A stretch of DNA of 64,000 nucleotides from assembly GCA_950097015.1 (NCBI GenBank), contig CATNEN010000015.1:1302001-1366000 (forward strand), given 5' to 3'. The stretch's first letter is position 1, and each line of letters starts with the position of its first letter. The position numbers were made by a program, and so were the translations under genes. This document shows, piece by piece, positions 52,431 through 59,412 of this stretch. The notes beneath the pieces were generated by a model. The model had not been told where the DNA came from. It was given only the letters and a program-made list of their open reading frames with translations, and made no database searches. This stretch comes from Macrostomum hystrix. Its lineage: Eukaryota; Animalia; Platyhelminthes.

Positions 52431-53117
52431 AGAGTTGGAAATATTTTACTCACAAGAGCACACTGCACTGGATTGAAGTGTTGCCTAAGCTGGTGAAATC
52501 ATACAATACTTGCCACAGAAGCATCAAATGGCACCGTCTAGTGCTGGTTCGAGGTCTGGATGAATCTGTACGATAGCAAGGCAATCGAGACTGTACAGGG
52601 CCCCAAAAAGCCGAAGTTCAGTGAGCAACAGTCCGTGAGAATTTCAAATGCACCCATGCAGGCTGTTCCGAAAGGGATACAAGGCCAACTGGAGCGAAGT
52701 GGTGTACACTGTGGTGTGCAGGGCACCAAAGCACTACCCATGCATGAACAAGATCCTAAACATGAAGGGTGAAGAGATTGGCGGGCTCTTTCACGAGCAT
52801 GAGCTGCAGGCTGTTCCGGACTCGCTGCCGGCTACAACTCCACAGGCCGGGTGGATGAAAAGGACTTCAGAAAAGTGTAGATAAGCCGCAATTAAAGCAA
52901 CCAGATATAATGAGAAACATTGTCATCAACAGCAACCATGGTGAAGGTATTTCTATAGTGACTTTTTTTACCTTGCTTCTCCTCTTTACCTGGATCGCGA
53001 TGTGGACTATGAGGCAGCTCTTGGGGAAATCCATCTGCCTGCCGCATGGTTCAATCTTGACGAACCTTGCTGCATCTGTCTCAGATGGAAGAGAGCATGA
53101 TTCATGATTCATGATTC

Positions 53118-55493
53118 ATGATTCAGCTCTCTCGATTTGAATCGAGAGAGCTCGATTCAAATCACACTGTACTATTTGACAAACTATTGCAAACCACTCC
53201 TTGGGAGTCGCGACGATGCGTTATAAGAGGAATAGAGCACAATGAACCTCGCAGGACATTTGCTTATGGAAAGCCATACTCCTACTGTGGAGTAGAATGG
53301 AAAGAGAACAACAACTGGCCTGAGGAGCTGCTCCAGATTAAACAGTGCTTGTCAAAAGAATTTAATGTTGACTTCAACAGTGTCCTCCTAAATCTATATC
53401 GAGATGGACAAGACTCAATCCAGCTGCATCAGGATAATGAGAAGTGTCTCGGCATCAACCCAGTCATTGCCAGCCTGTCTCTTGGAGCTGAGAGATGCCT
53501 GACTGTTGAGAACACGGACGAAAAACGGCATTACTCATTAATAATGTCACCAGGCAGCATGCTGGTGATGCAAGGGGACTGTCAGACCAAGTTCAAACAT
53601 GGAGTCCTAAAGACGAGGGAAAGCGCACCACGCATCAACGTGACATTTCGCCACATTGTGCCTGAATTAAACGATGTACCAAGCCGCAACGAGCCGACGC
53701 CCTCAGAAACGAGTATGGACATTGCAGTAAAGACGCCTGAGCAGATAATCGATGAAAGGAAAAAATCTGAATCGACTGATGCAGCTGATGCCCACTTTGA
53801 CATCTCATTCCTCAGTCAGCCTCTTCAAGAAGCCAAGACGCGACTCGGGAAGCGGAAGCAAAAGCTGGCTGACAAAGAATCAGCTGCGTCCGCCGAAGAG
53901 ACGACCGTGTTAGAAGATGCGAGCTTTAAGGTCCCGAAGACCAAAAAGTTCCGAAAAAGGAGATCACCAATGAAGGGAGCTGACAAAAGCGATAAAGCCG
54001 TACAGACAGAGTTGATTCCAGTAGATGCAGCAACTAACACAGAGAACAACCTACTGATGGATACAGACTGGAAACGTTTGAAATCTCTCGAGGAAGGAGT
54101 CGCAGCGGTTCTCAGTGAAGTAAAACAACTGAAAAGTAGCTTGTCAATTGATGAGTACATTCAAAAGACTCGCAATGCGCTTCAATCCTTGACCACCGGT
54201 CTAATGCATCAGTTAGAGGCAAAAGCCAAAGAAAGTCAAACGGAACTACTGAAAGCGCTAAACATCACAAAATCCGACGTTGTGAACCATCTAAAGCAAA
54301 CAAGTAGCTCAACTAAGGATGCTATCATTAGCGAAGAAAGAGCAGTGAAGGCAGAAGTAATAAAAAGCCAACAAATCAGCCACAGCCTCGAGCAGAAGGT
54401 CGGTGAACTGGTCAGTCTGCAAGCGCTGGCGTTCACTAAGACGCAGAATGAAAGAGCAGGACGGGAAACATATGCTGAGAAGGCCTCGCGCTCAGTGAAC
54501 CCAACAGCATCTTCAAAAAATGTAACGATGGCAGTCAGTGCCAGTAAAAATGCAGAGAACGCATCAGGAGCTGTAGCAAGGGACTCGGAACCAGCTGAGG
54601 CAGAAAGCAACAGTTGTACCAAACAGAAAGTTAAAGAAGGCCTGAAAAAGCATGATATAGTCGTTGTCAGCTCAAAGCTAGGGAAAGCCCTTGACTATCG
54701 CAGACTCTTCCCGAATAGTACAATTCGAGTTGTCTACTACAACACTCAAGAAAGGCTCATTGAATTACTGCAAGAGCCAAACTTCAGTGCGCAAGAATGT
54801 CTGGTAATTGACTTAAACCATGAGCCATCAATGGAGGTGGCATATAAAGCTGTCACTGCAATTGACGCTGGGCAAAGGCAACACGGTGCGAATTGCCTGC
54901 ACCTACTCATCATCCCAGACAGTTCGACACGAACAGAACAACTCTTCGAGAAAGAACTGTGTGAGTATGGTGTTAAACATCAGCTTTTAACATTTAACTT
55001 TCATGAAATCCACTTCTACGACGGTGAACTCAACAGCAGCGGAGCGGACTTTTTGTTTGCGTTAATGTCCAAATGCATTCGAAATCTAAACCTGAAAGTA
55101 CGGCCGCATCCGGCTAACACAGAGAACCAGCGCCAGCAAACAGTGCATCACCGGCATCAACACAGCTACAGAGAGTCACGAGGCGGCGGTGCAACTGGCT
55201 ACAGGAACTATCGAGCGCATAGCAGCTACCCAGTTCGAGATGCCAATTACATCCGTAGCGAAATAGACCACCGCATCAGCACCAACGGCTATTTTGACAG
55301 AAGTCGTGCTAGCCGCTATCGAATCAGCAACGAGTACGACTACAACAAAAGAGACCGCAAAAACTTTATAAGTGGCTATCGCGCCAATATCGAGCCCAGC
55401 AACTACCGCAGAAGTAGCTTTGGGTACCGCAACAGATACCAACAAGTTGGTGTCAGGCGCCTCGACGACCGCCAGTTTCGTTGCGTCGACTAG
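53118..55493 (+). CDS. LINE ORF1 (791 aa): N-terminal AlkB-family 2OG-Fe(II) dioxygenase, basic linker, coiled coil, degenerate SGNH-like domain, R/Y-rich tail
   Basis: ALKBH2/3-type motifs EPRRT.AYG..YSY.G, FNSVLLNLYRDGQDSIQLHQD, PVIASLSLGAER, GSMLVMQG..Q..FKHGV, RINVTFR. N92, Y94, H104, D106, H161, R172 and R178 are all present. Confidence 0.88.
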   Translation: MIQLSRFESRELDSNHTVLFDKLLQTTPWESRRCVIRGIEHNEPRRTFAYGKPYSYCGVEWKENNNWPEELLQIKQCLSKEFNVDFNSVLLNLYRDGQDSIQLHQDNEKCLGINPVIASLSLGAERCLTVENTDEKRHYSLIMSPGSMLVMQGDCQTKFKHGVLKTRESAPRINVTFRHIVPELNDVPSRNEPTPSETSMDIAVKTPEQIIDERKKSESTDAADAHFDISFLSQPLQEAKTRLGKRKQKLADKESAASAEETTVLEDASFKVPKTKKFRKRRSPMKGADKSDKAVQTELIPVDAATNTENNLLMDTDWKRLKSLEEGVAAVLSEVKQLKSSLSIDEYIQKTRNALQSLTTGLMHQLEAKAKESQTELLKALNITKSDVVNHLKQTSSSTKDAIISEERAVKAEVIKSQQISHSLEQKVGELVSLQALAFTKTQNERAGRETYAEKASRSVNPTASSKNVTMAVSASKNAENASGAVARDSEPAEAESNSCTKQKVKEGLKKHDIVVVSSKLGKALDYRRLFPNSTIRVVYYNTQERLIELLQEPNFSAQECLVIDLNHEPSMEVAYKAVTAIDAGQRQHGANCLHLLIIPDSSTRTEQLFEKELCEYGVKHQLLTFNFHEIHFYDGELNSSGADFLFALMSKCIRNLNLKVRPHPANTENQRQQTVHHRHQHSYRESRGGGATGYRNYRAHSSYPVRDANYIRSEIDHRISTNGYFDRSRASRYRISNEYDYNKRDRKNFISGYRANIEPSNYRRSSFGYRNRYQQVGVRRLDDRQFRCVD

Positions 55494-55701
55494 GACCGCC
55501 TGTCCAAGCCTGTCCGGCAACAACTTCAATCGCCGGGGGGGTGGAGGAGTCATTTAGCTGCTCAACTCGGGTCCTCTAACTCCTTTGCCTAATAACTTTC
55601 TATTTTTGATACCGTCAATTCCCATACCGCGCAACAGGTTTTGAAGGTTTTGAACCCGTCGTGACTGACTCTAAGGACTACTACTCCCTCTTTCTACGAG
55701 T

Positions 55702-58700
55702 ATGTTAACTTCTACGCTAAATTTTAACTCCCGAATAGTCACTGAAACACAGGGCAGCTGCGAAAAGAAGGTTACTTATAATAAATCAGAGTTGATTATC
55801 ACCAGTTGGAACATAGATGGACTGATGCTCAGTGGAGAATGCAAAATGGAATCACCATGTTTCCACGAACATATTAGGAATAGAGACATAGTTTTCCTCT
55901 GTGAGACCCACGCCAAACAGGAGCAGCTAGACTCAAACACGCTGATAGATTTCACCTGCTTTGGAGCAGATGGAATCAAGGCAAGGGGAATCAACAAAGG
56001 TAGATTATCAAATGGCATGGTTTTCCTCGTTAAAAATAATATTGCAAAGAGAACCACATTAGTGCACAAATCTGACTTCGCTCTGGTACTAAAAATAAAG
56101 CAAAAGCAGTCTGAAGAACCCCTGTATATCTTAGGGTGTTATATCCCACCGGAAAATTCTAAATACTACAAAGAAGATATATGGGAGGAGATTAAATATC
56201 TCATCCAGCTCTTCTCAAGAGAGGGCTCCGTATTAACAGTAGGTGACTTCAATGCACGAACTGGCACATTACAGTCCAGCACTAGGGATAAGTTTCCCAG
56301 ACAGAATCAGGACTCTGAGAAAAACAAGCATGGACTAAGACTGATGGAAATGTGCTCCGAGACCAAGAGCACGATTCTGAACGGAATGACTCAGGGTGAC
56401 ATTGTGGGAAATTACACGTTTAGTAGCACACTAGGCCGAAGTACCATAGACTACGCTATTGCATCCATGGATAAAGTGGATATTATAAAAGACTTCTTTA
56501 TTCATCCTCAAAGCTTTCTGTCCAGACATTGCCCGCTAACAGTCACTCTGATTTTTCCTGATCATGTCCAACCAGAACACGCAAACCAGGAAAAACATGA
56601 ATCCTTCCCAATGCCTCCAAGATGGGACACTGAAACGCAGGGAAGTTACATTGAGGCATTGAATAACAAACAAAGCGAAGAAATAATTAGAAAGTTGCAA
56701 TCTATCGACGCACACGATGGAAAATCCCTGGAAAATTTGTTCTCGAGCTTGACCAACCTGCTTAGAGACTCAGTGGCAGAAAGCTGCGCAAAGACAATCA
56801 TTCCGAACAAGTTCTGGACAAATCGAGACGAGACACTAAGAAACTTGAGCAAATCATTAAAGTACGTGGCCAGGAAAAAAAGACGTAGACCAACTGACAG
56901 CGCGCTGGCATCAGAATATAATGGGCTAGCGAAAAAATACAAACAACAGCTCAAGAAACTTAAGCAGATGGACATAAATGACTGCATTCAGAAAATGGCG
57001 GCTAACGGAACCTCAAAGGGATTCTGGTCCGGTCTTAGAAGAGCAGAAGAGTTGCTGTTCCCCAGCAGGAGACTTAACAGATCTCAAGCCCCAATCGCTG
57101 ACATCGCGGACAACCTAACCAAAGTGTTTAACGCACATCCTTCTTCGGGAACCCAGCCGCATCGCACAGATGAAGCAGTTAGTCCCGAAGATTTAATTAG
57201 CTGCGTAGATCTCGATAGAGCAGTTAAAAAGCTAAAGAGAAGAAAGGCTGCAGGAATAGATGGTATAACAAATGAGCACATTATCTACGGACAAGAGAAG
57301 CTAAAACCCGTACTTCTGAAGCTTTTTAACGCAAGCGTAAGACTCGGCCAGACTCCTGCACAGTGGTCAAATGCCCTAATCACACCGATTTATAAAAAGG
57401 GTTCCCGTAGTGACCCCAAAAACTACAGACCCATAAGCGTGCTGCCTGCCCTGGCTCGCCTGTTTGCCTCACTTATCTATGAAAAGCTAGAAACTCATAT
57501 TCGCACCCTCGACTTGCTTTCAGCCAGTCAAATAGGAAATAGAAAGGGCTACCGAACTTCAGACCACATTGCCACTCTCTTGACGTTGATCCACAACAAA
57601 AAGCGTCGCAAAAGGCCATTTCACTTAGTGTTCTTTGACTTAAAAAGCGCATTTGACATGGTCCACCATCCAACACTTTTCCAACGACTTAGGGAGTTAA
57701 AGGTCAGCCCAGAAATAATCGAAGCAATACAAAGCATGTACTCAGGAGCTAAATTCCAACTGAAGATCTCAGATGGCCAAGCAACTAAGGCAAGGAGCAT
57801 AACAAATGGAGTAAGACAAGGCTGTCCCCTATCCCCTCTACTCTTCTCACTCTATATAGATCCTTTGAGCACAATGCTAAGGGATTCATTTCGCAGCGAC
57901 ACCTTCATTAAAGATGAACAAATCAACAACTTGCTATACTGCGATGATTTAGTGATCTTTGGAGAGAATCCTCGAGAGTTGCAGAAGGGCCTCGATAAAG
58001 TGTCAGAATTTTGTCAGAGCCACAAGCTAGAAATCAATATGCAAAAAACTAAGGTTATTAGCTGTTGCCCTGACCCATCAAAGACGGCTAACAAACTATT
58101 TCTGCAGGGACAACTGTTAGATAGCGTCAAAGAATGGAAATATCTTGGCTTTCACATCAATGCTAAAGGAACCGTGGATTCCCATGCCACAGAGATTAAC
58201 AAAAAATGTGGATATCCTATTCTTCTCTTAAGGAAATTAGCCAGCCATGGGGCGGTCAGATACAATCAGCTCATGCTGTACTGCACAGCAATGATAGAAA
58301 GCATAGCTCTGTACGCCTCTGAGGCCTGGGGGGCTTTTGTCTCGTGGAACCTGGGTCCTTGGGACCGCTGTCTTTTTGAAAGAGTAAACATCAGGTGCTG
58401 TAAAGCCATACTACAAGTCAGCCAAAATACGGATGGCAACGGGGCCCGCTCGGAGTTAGGCTGATTGCCTTTATTATACAACATCCAGAAAAGAAGCATT
58501 TCGTACTGGGCCTCCATAACAAGCCGGCCGGACTCCATAATTTCCAAGTTATTGGCGGACCAAACATACAGTGATGTTGGAATCAAAGCAAAGACCAACA
58601 ATGAGGTTATGCTGAACTGCAGAGGCATTAGTCCTGCAAAAGCAATTGGAAACCACAGGAAAAATTTCGTTTCTCAGTTCGATACCCATTGGAGACAAAG

Positions 58701-59136
58701 GACACAGAACTCAAGCAAGCTAAGTCACTTCTATTACTCCTTCAAGCAATATTATTCAGCCGAAAAATATTTACAACAAATATACAACCCGGAGTGGAGA
58801 CGTACCATAGCCTCGTTTAGACTAGGAAACCATAAGCTAGCTTGCGAAACATTGCGAACTGCGAGACCGAAAATTCCGTATGTAAATAGATTATGTAGTA
58901 AGTGCAAAACAGAAGTTGAAAACGAGGTCCACTTCCTTTTTAAGTGCACTTGGAATAAGTATAGCGCAGTACGTTCGAAATTTGAGACGGAAGTTTCTGG
59001 GAAAACCCCCAATTTCATATCCTTAACAGCAGAAGAAAAATCTAACTACATAATGGCTCAAGACGATAGGGAAACCGCTGAAGCTTTAGCAAAATACATC
59101 ATAGAAATATCTAAAATAAGGGAACAGCTGCCCTGA
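55702..59136 (+). CDS. LINE ORF2: APE endonuclease, reverse transcriptase, C-terminal Cys/His motif; interrupted by one TGA at 58462-58464
   Basis: EN motifs SWNIDGL, LCETH, YIPP, GDFNART, STIDY. RT motifs PIYKKG..DPKNYRPIS, FFDLKSAFD, GVRQGCPLSPLLF, YCDD, WKYLG. Tail RLCSKCKTEVENEVHFLFKC. Confidence 0.92.
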
Positions 59137-59378
59137 GACTGCGAGATTTTACTAGCATTCAACAATAGATATTTCATAATTTGTTTTATCCCTGGCGTCC
59201 CTTGTGTTTTTACTGCTCTTATTTTTAATACCTTTGCTTTCCCTTCCCAGCTCGATATTTGATTCCTACTTAACTTCGCTTTTTATGTTGCTTTTCGTTG
59301 TTCATTTAAATGTGTTGTTAAAAAATACGAGCTCGTATATATATAAAAAAATCAGCACCCATAGATGGCGTGCGCGTT

Positions 59379-59412
<34 letters not shown>

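What the first reader, a model, noticed from the sequence alone, without database searches (positions are those of the whole stretch)
53118..53660. LINE retrotransposon carrying a catalytically intact AlkB dioxygenase in ORF1
Seen: the first 180 aa of ORF1 form an ALKBH2/3-type domain with the full Fe(II) triad (H104-x-D106, H161), the 2-oxoglutarate residues (N92, Y94, R172, R178) and the substrate-lid motif (EPRRT.AYG..YSY). It is intronless, in one frame with a typical ORF1 coiled coil, and 208 nt upstream of an APE-RT ORF2. Known: AlkB enzymes oxidatively remove m1A/m3C and related methyl marks from ssDNA and RNA, such lesions block reverse transcription, and some plant RNA viruses carry AlkB in their replicase. 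Usual CR1/L2-group ORF1 modules are RRM, PHD, CCHC and esterase. Inference: the element packages its own repair or demethylase enzyme in the RNP, to protect its RNA or cDNA or to erase host methyl marks. I do not know this as a characterised LINE feature, but cannot exclude earlier repeat-database annotations.
Basis: partly seen in the sequence, partly recalled or inferred. Interest (0 to 1): 0.92.

Follow-up and report, generated by a model that had tools for sequence, protein, structure and literature searches.

The report
LINE whose ORF1 carries AlkB dioxygenase
A very young jumping gene (LINE) of a Macrostomum-type flatworm has a complete, conserved ALKBH3-like nucleic-acid demethylase fused to the front of its RNA-coating ORF1 protein; I found no paper describing this accessory enzyme in LINEs, and it suggests that methylated bases limit the element's copying.

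Summary
Window 53151-59410 (+) is a dead copy of a 7.0-kb APE-RT LINE. Five full-length copies elsewhere (99.3-99.96% alike) have open ORF1 (840 aa) and ORF2 (1144 aa).

ORF1 reads: AlkB, linker, long helices, small alpha/beta domain, Arg-rich tail. The AlkB part is ALKBH2/3-type (Pfam 4e-25; PDB ALKBH3 2e-26; model TM 0.84-0.86). It keeps the Fe(II) triad, the 2-oxoglutarate residues and all 24 near-invariant family positions.

AlkB is in every relative of this lineage that keeps its 5' part, and is the best-conserved ORF1 segment. It also sits in ORF1 of other LINE lineages of this genome (RT 25-29% identical; AlkB dN/dS 0.05-0.08). One LINE in an unrelated public run has an AlkB-OTU-CCCH ORF1.

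The host ALKBH3 is a separate multi-exon gene. Catalysis, substrate and expression are untested. The only retrotransposon AlkB in the searched literature is an ALKBH5-like one in an orchid Gypsy element.

This scan already noted AlkB-LINEs on other DNA of this genome.

The parts
53096..53150 (+). Flank and 5' junction: (CATGATT)4 repeat, then about 25 nt holding an inverted copy of the element's first 13 nt.
53151..59410 (+). 5'-truncated copy of a 7.0-kb APE-type LINE. It lacks about 784 nt: the 5'UTR and ORF1 codons 1-60.
   Evidence: blastn against five full-length copies, 99.3-99.7% identity
53151..53666 (+). AlkB (ALKBH2/3-type) 2OG/Fe(II) dioxygenase core, residues 61-232 of the full 840-aa ORF1p. 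Window numbering: H104, D106, H161, N92, Y94, R172, R178.
53667..54035 (+). Low-confidence, K/A/S/D/E-rich linker with basic patches.
   Evidence: AF2 pLDDT below 50 over most of it; composition
54036..54491 (+). Three long helices (full-length residues 356-507), the presumed coiled-coil multimerisation region.
   Evidence: AF2 helices 356-387, 393-441 and 446-507, pLDDT 62-86
54642..55145 (+). Small alpha/beta domain, possibly a degenerate SGNH-esterase-like domain. Not confirmed.
   Evidence: Atlas feature hits to GDSL-like lipase clusters at 0.88-0.89; alternating strand-helix pattern at low pLDDT; no Pfam, PDB or protein-database hit
55146..55493 (+). Arg/Ser/Tyr-rich C-terminal tail (R 20%) and the ORF1 stop codon; the likely RNA-binding arginine-rich motif.
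   Evidence: composition; architecture parallel in PMC3905857
55494..55701 (+). 208-nt ORF1-ORF2 spacer.
55702..59136 (+). ORF2: APE endonuclease (about 55804-56535), RT (about 57394-58158) and a Cys-His motif (58894-58959). Broken by one in-frame stop at 58462-58464.
59137..59410 (+). 3'UTR with a small hairpin (59348-59380, z -1.4, not remarkable), a 10-nt insertion private to this copy, and a (TAA)10 tail at 59380-59410.

Best explanation
The window holds a dead, 5'-truncated insert of a very recently active APE-RT LINE family of a Macrostomum-type flatworm.

Shown:
- The family's ORF1 protein (840 aa) begins with a complete ALKBH3-like Fe(II)/2-oxoglutarate dioxygenase.
- This domain is fused in frame to helices, a small alpha/beta domain and an Arg-rich tail.
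- AlkB is ancestral to this lineage, is its best-conserved ORF1 segment, and recurs in other LINE lineages.

Inferred:
- ORF1p coats the element's own RNA, which brings AlkB onto the template.
- There AlkB oxidatively removes N1-methyladenine, N3-methylcytosine and similar lesions or marks from the single-stranded RNA, and perhaps from the nascent single-stranded cDNA. These bases would otherwise stall or miscode reverse transcription at the target site.

My confidence in the architecture is about 0.95. My confidence in the repair-of-own-template mechanism is about 0.5.
For: Domain identity:
- Pfam E 4e-25. PDB ALKBH3 2e-26 against ALKBH2 9e-15; no ALKBH5 or FTO hit.
- The AF2 model has pLDDT 96-98 over residues 52-232.
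- Foldseek ranks ALKBH3 first at TM 0.81-0.86, then ALKBH2.
- All 24 positions that are at least 90% conserved among 103 AlkB sequences are kept, including H153, D155, H210, R221, R227, N141 and Y143.

Integral to the element:
- Five full-length copies, 99.3-99.96% alike, each have an open 840-aa ORF1 and an open 1144-aa ORF2.
- Four more ORF1-bearing copies are truncated at different 5' points.
- The 3' kb gave 244 first-look candidates, most of the 40 scored being at least 98% identical.
- Copies end in (TAA)n tails and have unrelated flanks.

Constraint:
- Within the family, ORF1 has 8 synonymous and 3 non-synonymous variable sites. That has roughly a 0.001 chance under a 3:1 neutral expectation (my arithmetic). 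The only AlkB variant is synonymous.
- Against the older relative L008, AlkB is 59% identical, while the linker is 48%, the helices 33% and the C-terminal domain 37-42%. Synonymous sites are saturated.
- In other AlkB-LINE families, AlkB dN/dS is 0.05-0.08.
- Every relative of the ORF1 backbone that keeps its 5' part has AlkB next to it.

Not the host gene: ALKBH3 is a separate multi-exon locus at C10:1690992-1694524, only about 41% identical.

Precedents: AlkB in plant RNA-virus replicases, and an active demethylase in an orchid Gypsy element (PMC9289625).
Against: - No enzymatic, expression or protein evidence. The public runs holding the element are contigs of unrecorded kind, so transcription is not shown.
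- AlkB-specific selection within this family has no power, with one variable site. The comparison with older relatives is against decayed copies.
- ALKBH3-type enzymes act on RNA and on single-stranded DNA, so the sequence does not name the substrate.
- Most LINEs retrotranspose without such a domain, so the benefit may be host-specific.
- That ORF1p of this type binds the RNA in cis is assumed from other LINEs.
Confidence: 0.6

Rival explanations
1. Eraser of host-imposed marks. The ORF1p AlkB removes regulatory or defensive RNA methyl marks (m6A, regulatory m1A or others) from the element's transcript, or from host RNAs. This would let it escape decay, silencing or reader-mediated restriction, rather than repair chemical damage.
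For: The orchid Gypsy AlkB demethylates m6A in vitro, and its authors propose epitranscriptomic evasion. Papers on L1 and m6A show that RNA methylation modulates retrotransposition (PMC7873242, listed). The repeated presence of AlkB in several LINE lineages of one genome would fit a host-specific pressure.
Against: The domain is ALKBH2/3-type, not ALKBH5/FTO/ALKBH9-10-type. PDB hits go to ALKBH3, ALKBH2 and weakly ALKBH7 only, and Foldseek ranks ALKBH3 and ALKBH2 first. By established knowledge, members of that subgroup mainly remove m1A and m3C. Nothing is known about RNA marks in this animal.
Confidence: 0.2
2. DNA-side function. AlkB acts on single-stranded DNA at the integration site or on the new cDNA, for example by removing 3mC made as an off-target product of host DNA methyltransferases or by alkylating agents. 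This would let second-strand synthesis and repair finish.
For: ALKBH3 is a single-stranded DNA and RNA enzyme; its solved complexes with 3mC ssDNA are the best structural matches. A review states that Macrostomum keeps DNMT1 and DNMT3 together with ALKB2, and that DNMTs generate 3mC (PMC9246332).
Against: ORF1 proteins are RNA-coating proteins, and whether they reach the target DNA is unknown for this class. No test was done here. This rival overlaps the best explanation, which already allows a cDNA substrate.
Confidence: 0.12
3. Non-catalytic module. The AlkB fold serves only as a single-strand nucleic-acid-binding domain, replacing the RRM that esterase-class ORF1 proteins lack.
For: No RRM or zinc knuckle is detected in this ORF1. 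The esterase-class ORF1ps described in PMC3905857 lack structured RNA-binding domains.
Against: Metal and cosubstrate ligands that binding does not need are kept in all LINE lineages examined, over divergences with saturated synonymous sites.
Confidence: 0.06
4. Chance fusion, host retrogene or assembly artefact: AlkB does not belong to the element.
For: The window copy alone, with a start codon in flank DNA, could look like a chance fusion.
Against: The same in-frame junction occurs in five full-length and four truncated copies on different contigs with unrelated flanks. It also occurs in older relatives and in independent public runs. The host ALKBH3 lies elsewhere and has introns.
Confidence: 0.01

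Closest known systems
Esterase-class LINE ORF1 proteins (ZfL2-1 of zebrafish, CR1/L2 group; Schneider et al. 2013, PMC3905857)
   Same: The backbone order is the same: coiled coil, poorly conserved linker, small alpha/beta domain, C-terminal arginine-rich motif. There is no RRM or zinc knuckle. The protein sits upstream of an APE-RT ORF2, and an enzyme domain is built into ORF1p.
   Different: An AlkB dioxygenase of about 230 aa precedes the coiled coil. The alpha/beta domain gives no detectable match to SGNH esterases, and the motifs I read by eye lack the catalytic His. The RT clade was not placed.
Orchid (Phalaenopsis) Ty3/Gypsy elements with an AlkB ORF (PMC9289625)
   Same: A retrotransposon that has fixed an AlkB-family dioxygenase. 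That one has demonstrated demethylase activity and is read as a counter to RNA methylation.
   Different: It is an LTR element of plants. Its AlkB is ALKBH5-like (an m6A eraser) and sits at the C-terminus of a separate extra ORF, in one recent lineage. Here AlkB is ALKBH2/3-type and fused to the N-terminus of a LINE ORF1p, in several old lineages of an animal.
AlkB domains in replicases of plant RNA viruses (Alpha- and Betaflexiviridae, Closteroviridae; cited in PMC9289625)
   Same: A selfish RNA replicon carries its own AlkB, reported to repair methyl damage in RNA. Same logic as the best explanation: protect a single-stranded template.
   Different: Those are RNA viruses, with the domain inside the replicase polyprotein. 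No reverse transcription is involved.
Human ALKBH3 (PDB 2IUW, 8JNK, 8JNR)
   Same: Best sequence and structure match. The Fe(II) triad, 2OG ligands and lid motif align.
   Different: About 29% identity over the structural alignment. The loop after the central strands is shorter. ALKBH3 is a stand-alone host repair enzyme, and the host's own orthologue is a different multi-exon gene.
Other AlkB-bearing LINEs: families elsewhere in this genome (earlier notes of this scan) and L028 from a public run
   Same: AlkB lies in ORF1, directly upstream of an APE-RT ORF2. Catalytic residues are kept and dN/dS is 0.05-0.08.
   Different: Their RTs are only 24-29% identical to this family's. In the other own-genome families AlkB follows an N-terminal extension of about 180 aa, and nothing beyond AlkB aligns. 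L028's ORF1 is AlkB + OTU protease + three CCCH fingers.

Membership tests
AlkB family, ALKBH2/3 subgroup | Double-stranded beta-helix fold with the N-terminal nucleotide-recognition lid | tested here: met
   AF2 model pLDDT 96-98 over residues 52-232; Foldseek TM 0.81-0.86 to ALKBH3 and 0.79-0.86 to ALKBH2
AlkB family, ALKBH2/3 subgroup | HxD...H Fe(II) triad and the Arg, Asn and Tyr ligands of 2-oxoglutarate | tested here: met
   H153, D155, H210, R221, R227, N141 and Y143 of the full ORF1p align to the ALKBH3 ligands and lie in columns at least 90% conserved
AlkB family, ALKBH2/3 subgroup | Closer to ALKBH2/3 than to other AlkB subfamilies | tested here: met
   phmmer E: ALKBH3 2e-26, ALKBH2 9e-15, ALKBH7 5e-4, no others. 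In the tree it groups with spider ALKBH3 and M. lignano ALKBH3
AlkB family, ALKBH2/3 subgroup | Oxidative demethylation of m1A/m3C in nucleic acid | not testable with these tools
   Needs an enzyme assay
APE-type non-LTR retrotransposon (LINE) | ORF2 with an N-terminal APE endonuclease and a central RT, no LTRs | tested here: met
   Pfam Exo_endo_phos and RVT_1; best PDB matches are L1 ORF2p and R2
APE-type non-LTR retrotransposon (LINE) | Dispersed copies with variable 5' truncation and a common 3' end with a simple-repeat tail | tested here: met
   5' ends at ORF1 nt 1, 181, 335, 631 and 794; many more 3' ends than 5' ends; (TAA)n tails and unrelated flanks
APE-type non-LTR retrotransposon (LINE) | Target-site duplications | tested here: inconclusive
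   Two copies lie in local tandem repeats that mimic a duplication; none is clear for the window copy
Esterase-class ORF1p (CC-ES-ARM) | Coiled coil preceding the enzyme domain, and a C-terminal Arg-rich motif | tested here: met
   Long helices at 356-507; tail 726-840 with R 20%; order as described in PMC3905857. Oligomerisation itself was not tested
Esterase-class ORF1p (CC-ES-ARM) | SGNH esterase domain | tested here: inconclusive
   No Pfam hit at E below 1; no PDB hit with sequence or profile; no database homologue; models at pLDDT about 50. The only leads are Atlas features at 0.88-0.89 and motifs I read by eye
CR1/L2 group of LINE clades | RT groups with reference CR1/L2 elements in a phylogeny | not tested
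   No reference set was available. Outside hits are 54% (one metagenome contig) and otherwise at most 36%. No RNase H domain

The most novel reading that the evidence does not exclude
AlkB-ORF1 is not a curiosity of one family but an unrecognised class of LINE ORF1 protein. An ALKBH3-derived repair or demethylase module has been joined to at least three unrelated ORF1 backbones: helices plus alpha/beta domain plus Arg tail; a second flatworm backbone; and OTU plus CCCH fingers. These sit in LINE lineages whose RTs are only 24-29% identical, in at least two organisms. That would mean base methylation of the RNA template or cDNA, by damage or by a host defence, is a general and selectable barrier to target-primed reverse transcription.
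Probability: 0.4. Interest if true: 0.85.

Novelty: new variant of a known kind. Interest (0 to 1): 0.72.

Why it matters
LINE ORF1 proteins are known as RNA chaperones or coats. The SGNH esterase is their only described enzyme module, and its role is still unclear.

A conserved nucleic-acid demethylase in ORF1p makes a specific, testable claim: methylated bases on the template or cDNA limit retrotransposition, and elements can carry the remedy. This links LINE biology to RNA/DNA alkylation repair and to epitranscriptomic defence. It parallels AlkB capture by plant RNA viruses and by one plant LTR element.

It also gives a natural system (several young families with open frames, in a transgenesis-capable flatworm genus) in which to test the claim.

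A practical point: TE-borne AlkB copies (at least 75 matches in this genome) can confound surveys that score presence or absence of ALKB2/3 genes across animals.

Tried and rejected
- Word-seeded protein search with ORF1 residues 1-240 found only two unrelated AlkB proteins. P0001 has AlkB in the middle of a non-LINE protein.
- The same search with the ORF1 C-terminal domain found nothing.
- The exhaustive representative search found 6418 AlkB proteins but none matching the ORF1 backbone, and none above 45% identity.
- ORF1 C-terminal domain: single-sequence AF2 was poor (pLDDT 49), and mixed-alignment AF2 was still low there. A PDB search with the sequence and with a 4-row profile gave nothing. 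The esterase identity is left open.
- ORF1 of the nearest outside RT relative with a long contig (L051) shares nothing with this ORF1.
- Long AlkB-containing proteins from sea cucumber and spider are not LINE-related.
- No 2A-like NPGP motif in ORF1.
Linkage was inferred from coordinates instead.
- The clade test on the 159-row tree did not finish, so a 57-row tree was used.
- Expression: the runs are contigs of unrecorded kind and cannot show RNA.
- The organism of run SRR10906881 could not be identified.
- The 3' hairpin is not better than shuffles (z -1.4).
- Host retrogene or chance fusion was rejected by the copy survey.
Full report
WHAT IS IN THE WINDOW

The + strand carries a 791-aa ORF (53118-55493). 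A second frame of 920 + 223 aa (55702-59136) follows 208 nt later and is interrupted by one stop at 58462-58464.
- The first ORF matches Pfam 2OG-FeII_Oxy_2 at residues 20-178 (E 4.1e-25).
- The second matches Exo_endo_phos, Exo_endo_phos_2 and RVT_1 (E 6e-43).
- The best solved relatives of the first 200 residues are human ALKBH3 (E 2e-26), then ALKBH2 (9e-15) and weakly ALKBH7. No ALKBH5 or FTO chain is hit.

THE WINDOW COPY IS A TRUNCATED, DEAD INSERT

Comparison with other copies in the same assembly shows that homology begins only at 53151 and ends in a (TAA)10 tail at 59380-59410.
- Full-length copies are 7.0 kb. In L021 (G000:C1) they comprise a 604-nt 5'UTR, ORF1 of 840 aa, the 208-nt spacer, ORF2 of 1144 aa and a 3'UTR of about 250 nt.
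- The window copy lacks about 784 nt. That includes the true start codon and ORF1 residues 1-60, which in the model contribute the first strands of the AlkB fold.

THE FAMILY

- Five full-length copies on five contigs are 99.3-99.96% identical. Each has both frames open.
- Four further copies keep part of ORF1, with 5' ends at ORF1 nt 181 (the window copy), 335, 631 and 794.
- The last kilobase gave 244 first-look candidates. Most of the 40 scored are at least 98% identical.
- Flanks are unrelated, so there is no obvious target specificity. Full-length copies start with a variable number of 9-nt ATCTGAGCC repeats.

This is the classic picture of a LINE family active until very recently.

THE AlkB DOMAIN

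In a 103-row alignment with AlkB proteins from the exhaustive search, all 24 columns conserved in at least 90% of rows are kept. These include the Fe(II) triad (H153, D155, H210 in full-length numbering) and the 2-oxoglutarate ligands (N141, Y143, R221, R227). With that alignment, AlphaFold models residues 52-232 at pLDDT 96-98. Foldseek ranks ALKBH3 complexes with single-stranded DNA first (TM 0.81-0.86), then ALKBH2, and only then ALKBH6, E. coli AlkB and NMAD-1.

THE REST OF ORF1

- After a low-confidence linker come three long helices (356-507, pLDDT 62-86).
- Then comes a small alternating strand-helix domain (about 558-725, low confidence).
- The tail has 20% Arg.
- This order (coiled coil, linker, enzyme-like domain, arginine-rich motif) is the one described for esterase-class ORF1 proteins (PMC3905857).
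- I could not show that the alpha/beta domain is an SGNH esterase. There was no Pfam, PDB or database hit. The only leads are language-model feature hits to GDSL-like lipase clusters at 0.88-0.89 and motifs read by eye that would lack the catalytic histidine.

SELECTION

- Within the young family, ORF1 has 8 synonymous and 3 non-synonymous variable sites, while ORF2 has 14 and 15. The single variable site in the 720 nt of AlkB is synonymous. This is too little to test AlkB alone.
- Older relatives (L008, L009, L010; 50-61% identical in AlkB) keep the same architecture. AlkB is their best-conserved ORF1 segment: in L008 it is 59% identical, against 48% in the linker, 33% in the helices and 37-42% in the C-terminal domain. 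Synonymous sites are saturated.
- Every genomic match to the C-terminal domain that still has its 5' part lies next to an AlkB match. I found no AlkB-less relative of this backbone.

OTHER LINEAGES

The genome holds at least 75 AlkB matches.
- Several groups only 38-40% identical to this AlkB lie 3.4-3.9 kb upstream of open RT frames. Those RTs are 25-29% identical to this family's RT.
- In these groups AlkB follows an N-terminal extension of about 180 aa in ORFs of at least 875 aa. Nothing beyond AlkB aligns with this ORF1.
- Between their subfamilies, AlkB dN/dS is 0.05-0.08 at dS 0.2-0.5. These are the families that earlier notes of this scan describe.
- Outside this genome, the exhaustive search turned up P0041. 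It sits on a 6.2-kb contig of run SRR10906881. Its ORF1 is AlkB + OTU protease + three CCCH fingers, and an APE-RT ORF2 starts 80 nt downstream. Its RT is 24% identical to this one.

ORIGIN

In a 57-row tree, the smallest group holding all LINE AlkBs also contains a spider ALKBH3-like protein and P0102, the ALKBH3 of Macrostomum lignano.
- The own-genome LINE AlkBs form one weakly supported clade.
- A single clade of all LINE AlkBs is not rejected (p-AU 0.97).
- The host orthologue of P0102 is a separate locus of at least four exon-like pieces (C10:1690992-1694524). It is 57-80% identical to the M. lignano protein, which also supports a Macrostomum-type host. It is only about 41% identical to the LINE AlkB.

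The data fit an old capture of an animal ALKBH3-type gene followed by module exchange among LINEs. The number of captures is not resolved.

EXPRESSION

Eight runs from two studies hold most of the element, but only as contigs of unrecorded kind. One 6.4-kb contig spans the 5'UTR to ORF2. An outdoor metagenome holds relatives at 90-96% identity, including AlkB parts. None of this shows RNA.

LITERATURE

Eight full-text searches found no description of AlkB in a LINE ORF1 (one search was for a run id).
- The nearest case is an ALKBH5-like m6A demethylase in a separate ORF of orchid Gypsy elements. That paper also cites AlkB in plant RNA viruses (PMC9289625).
- ORF1 domain surveys in the library hold no occurrence of AlkB.
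- Repbase and Dfam could not be searched.

MECHANISM AND ITS STANDING

Shown: architecture, copy history, conservation of catalytic residues, subgroup.

Inferred from established knowledge:
- ORF1 proteins coat their own RNA.
- ALKBH3-type enzymes remove m1A and m3C from single-stranded RNA and DNA.
- These bases block or miscode reverse transcriptases.

From these I infer that ORF1p delivers a repair or demethylase activity to the template or nascent cDNA during target-primed reverse transcription. The rivals are erasure of regulatory RNA marks, action on target-site DNA, and a purely binding role. A substrate assay and a metal-ligand mutant would separate them.

LIMITS

No reference RT phylogeny was possible, so the CR1/L2 placement is not tested.

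Noticed in passing
L028:362-6012 (Logan contig of run SRR10906881): A complete LINE from an unidentified organism. Its ORF1 (746 aa) combines AlkB, an OTU cysteine protease and three CCCH zinc fingers; an APE-RT ORF2 starts 80 nt downstream. I did not find an OTU-bearing LINE ORF1 in the papers searched.
   Followed up: partly
G000:C12:3679080-3692590 and C29:3903040-3934631: Copies of a different AlkB-LINE family (922-928-aa open frames) recur at about 6.3-6.5-kb spacing, i.e. in tandem arrays. This would fit earlier scan notes of site-specific insertion into tandem small-RNA genes, which I did not check.
   Followed up: no
G000:C10:304602-307658, C41:369206-372262, C38:29654769-29655389: Intronless open frames of 360-545 aa, 29-34% identical to the LINE AlkB and to host ALKBH3 (including its N-terminal part), present as paired neighbours on two contigs. 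Whether they are host paralogues or another mobile family is unknown.
   Followed up: no
G000:C10:1690992-1694524 (-): The host ALKBH3 orthologue in at least four exon-like pieces, 57-80% identical to M. lignano A0A1I8FX44. With at least 75 TE-borne AlkB matches in the genome, presence/absence surveys of ALKB2/3 in flatworms could be confounded.
   Followed up: partly
window 53126-53163: The 5' junction of the truncated copy holds a 13-nt inverted duplicate of the element's first bases, forming a perfect small palindrome. It looks like a snap-back or template-switch scar of 5' end formation.
   Followed up: partly
L022, L024, L025 5' ends: Full-length copies begin with two to five tandem 9-nt units (ATCTGAGCC) whose number differs between copies, suggesting repeat addition or slippage at the 5' end during integration.
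   Followed up: no
window about 59326-59336: A 10-nt palindromic insertion in the 3'UTR, private to the window copy among the seven copies aligned.
   Followed up: no
run X9 (outdoor metagenome), laid on L021:2217-8216: 112 contigs at mostly 90-95% identity cover parts of the element, including the AlkB region. A related worm or a diverged subfamily therefore occurs in an environmental sample.
   Followed up: partly
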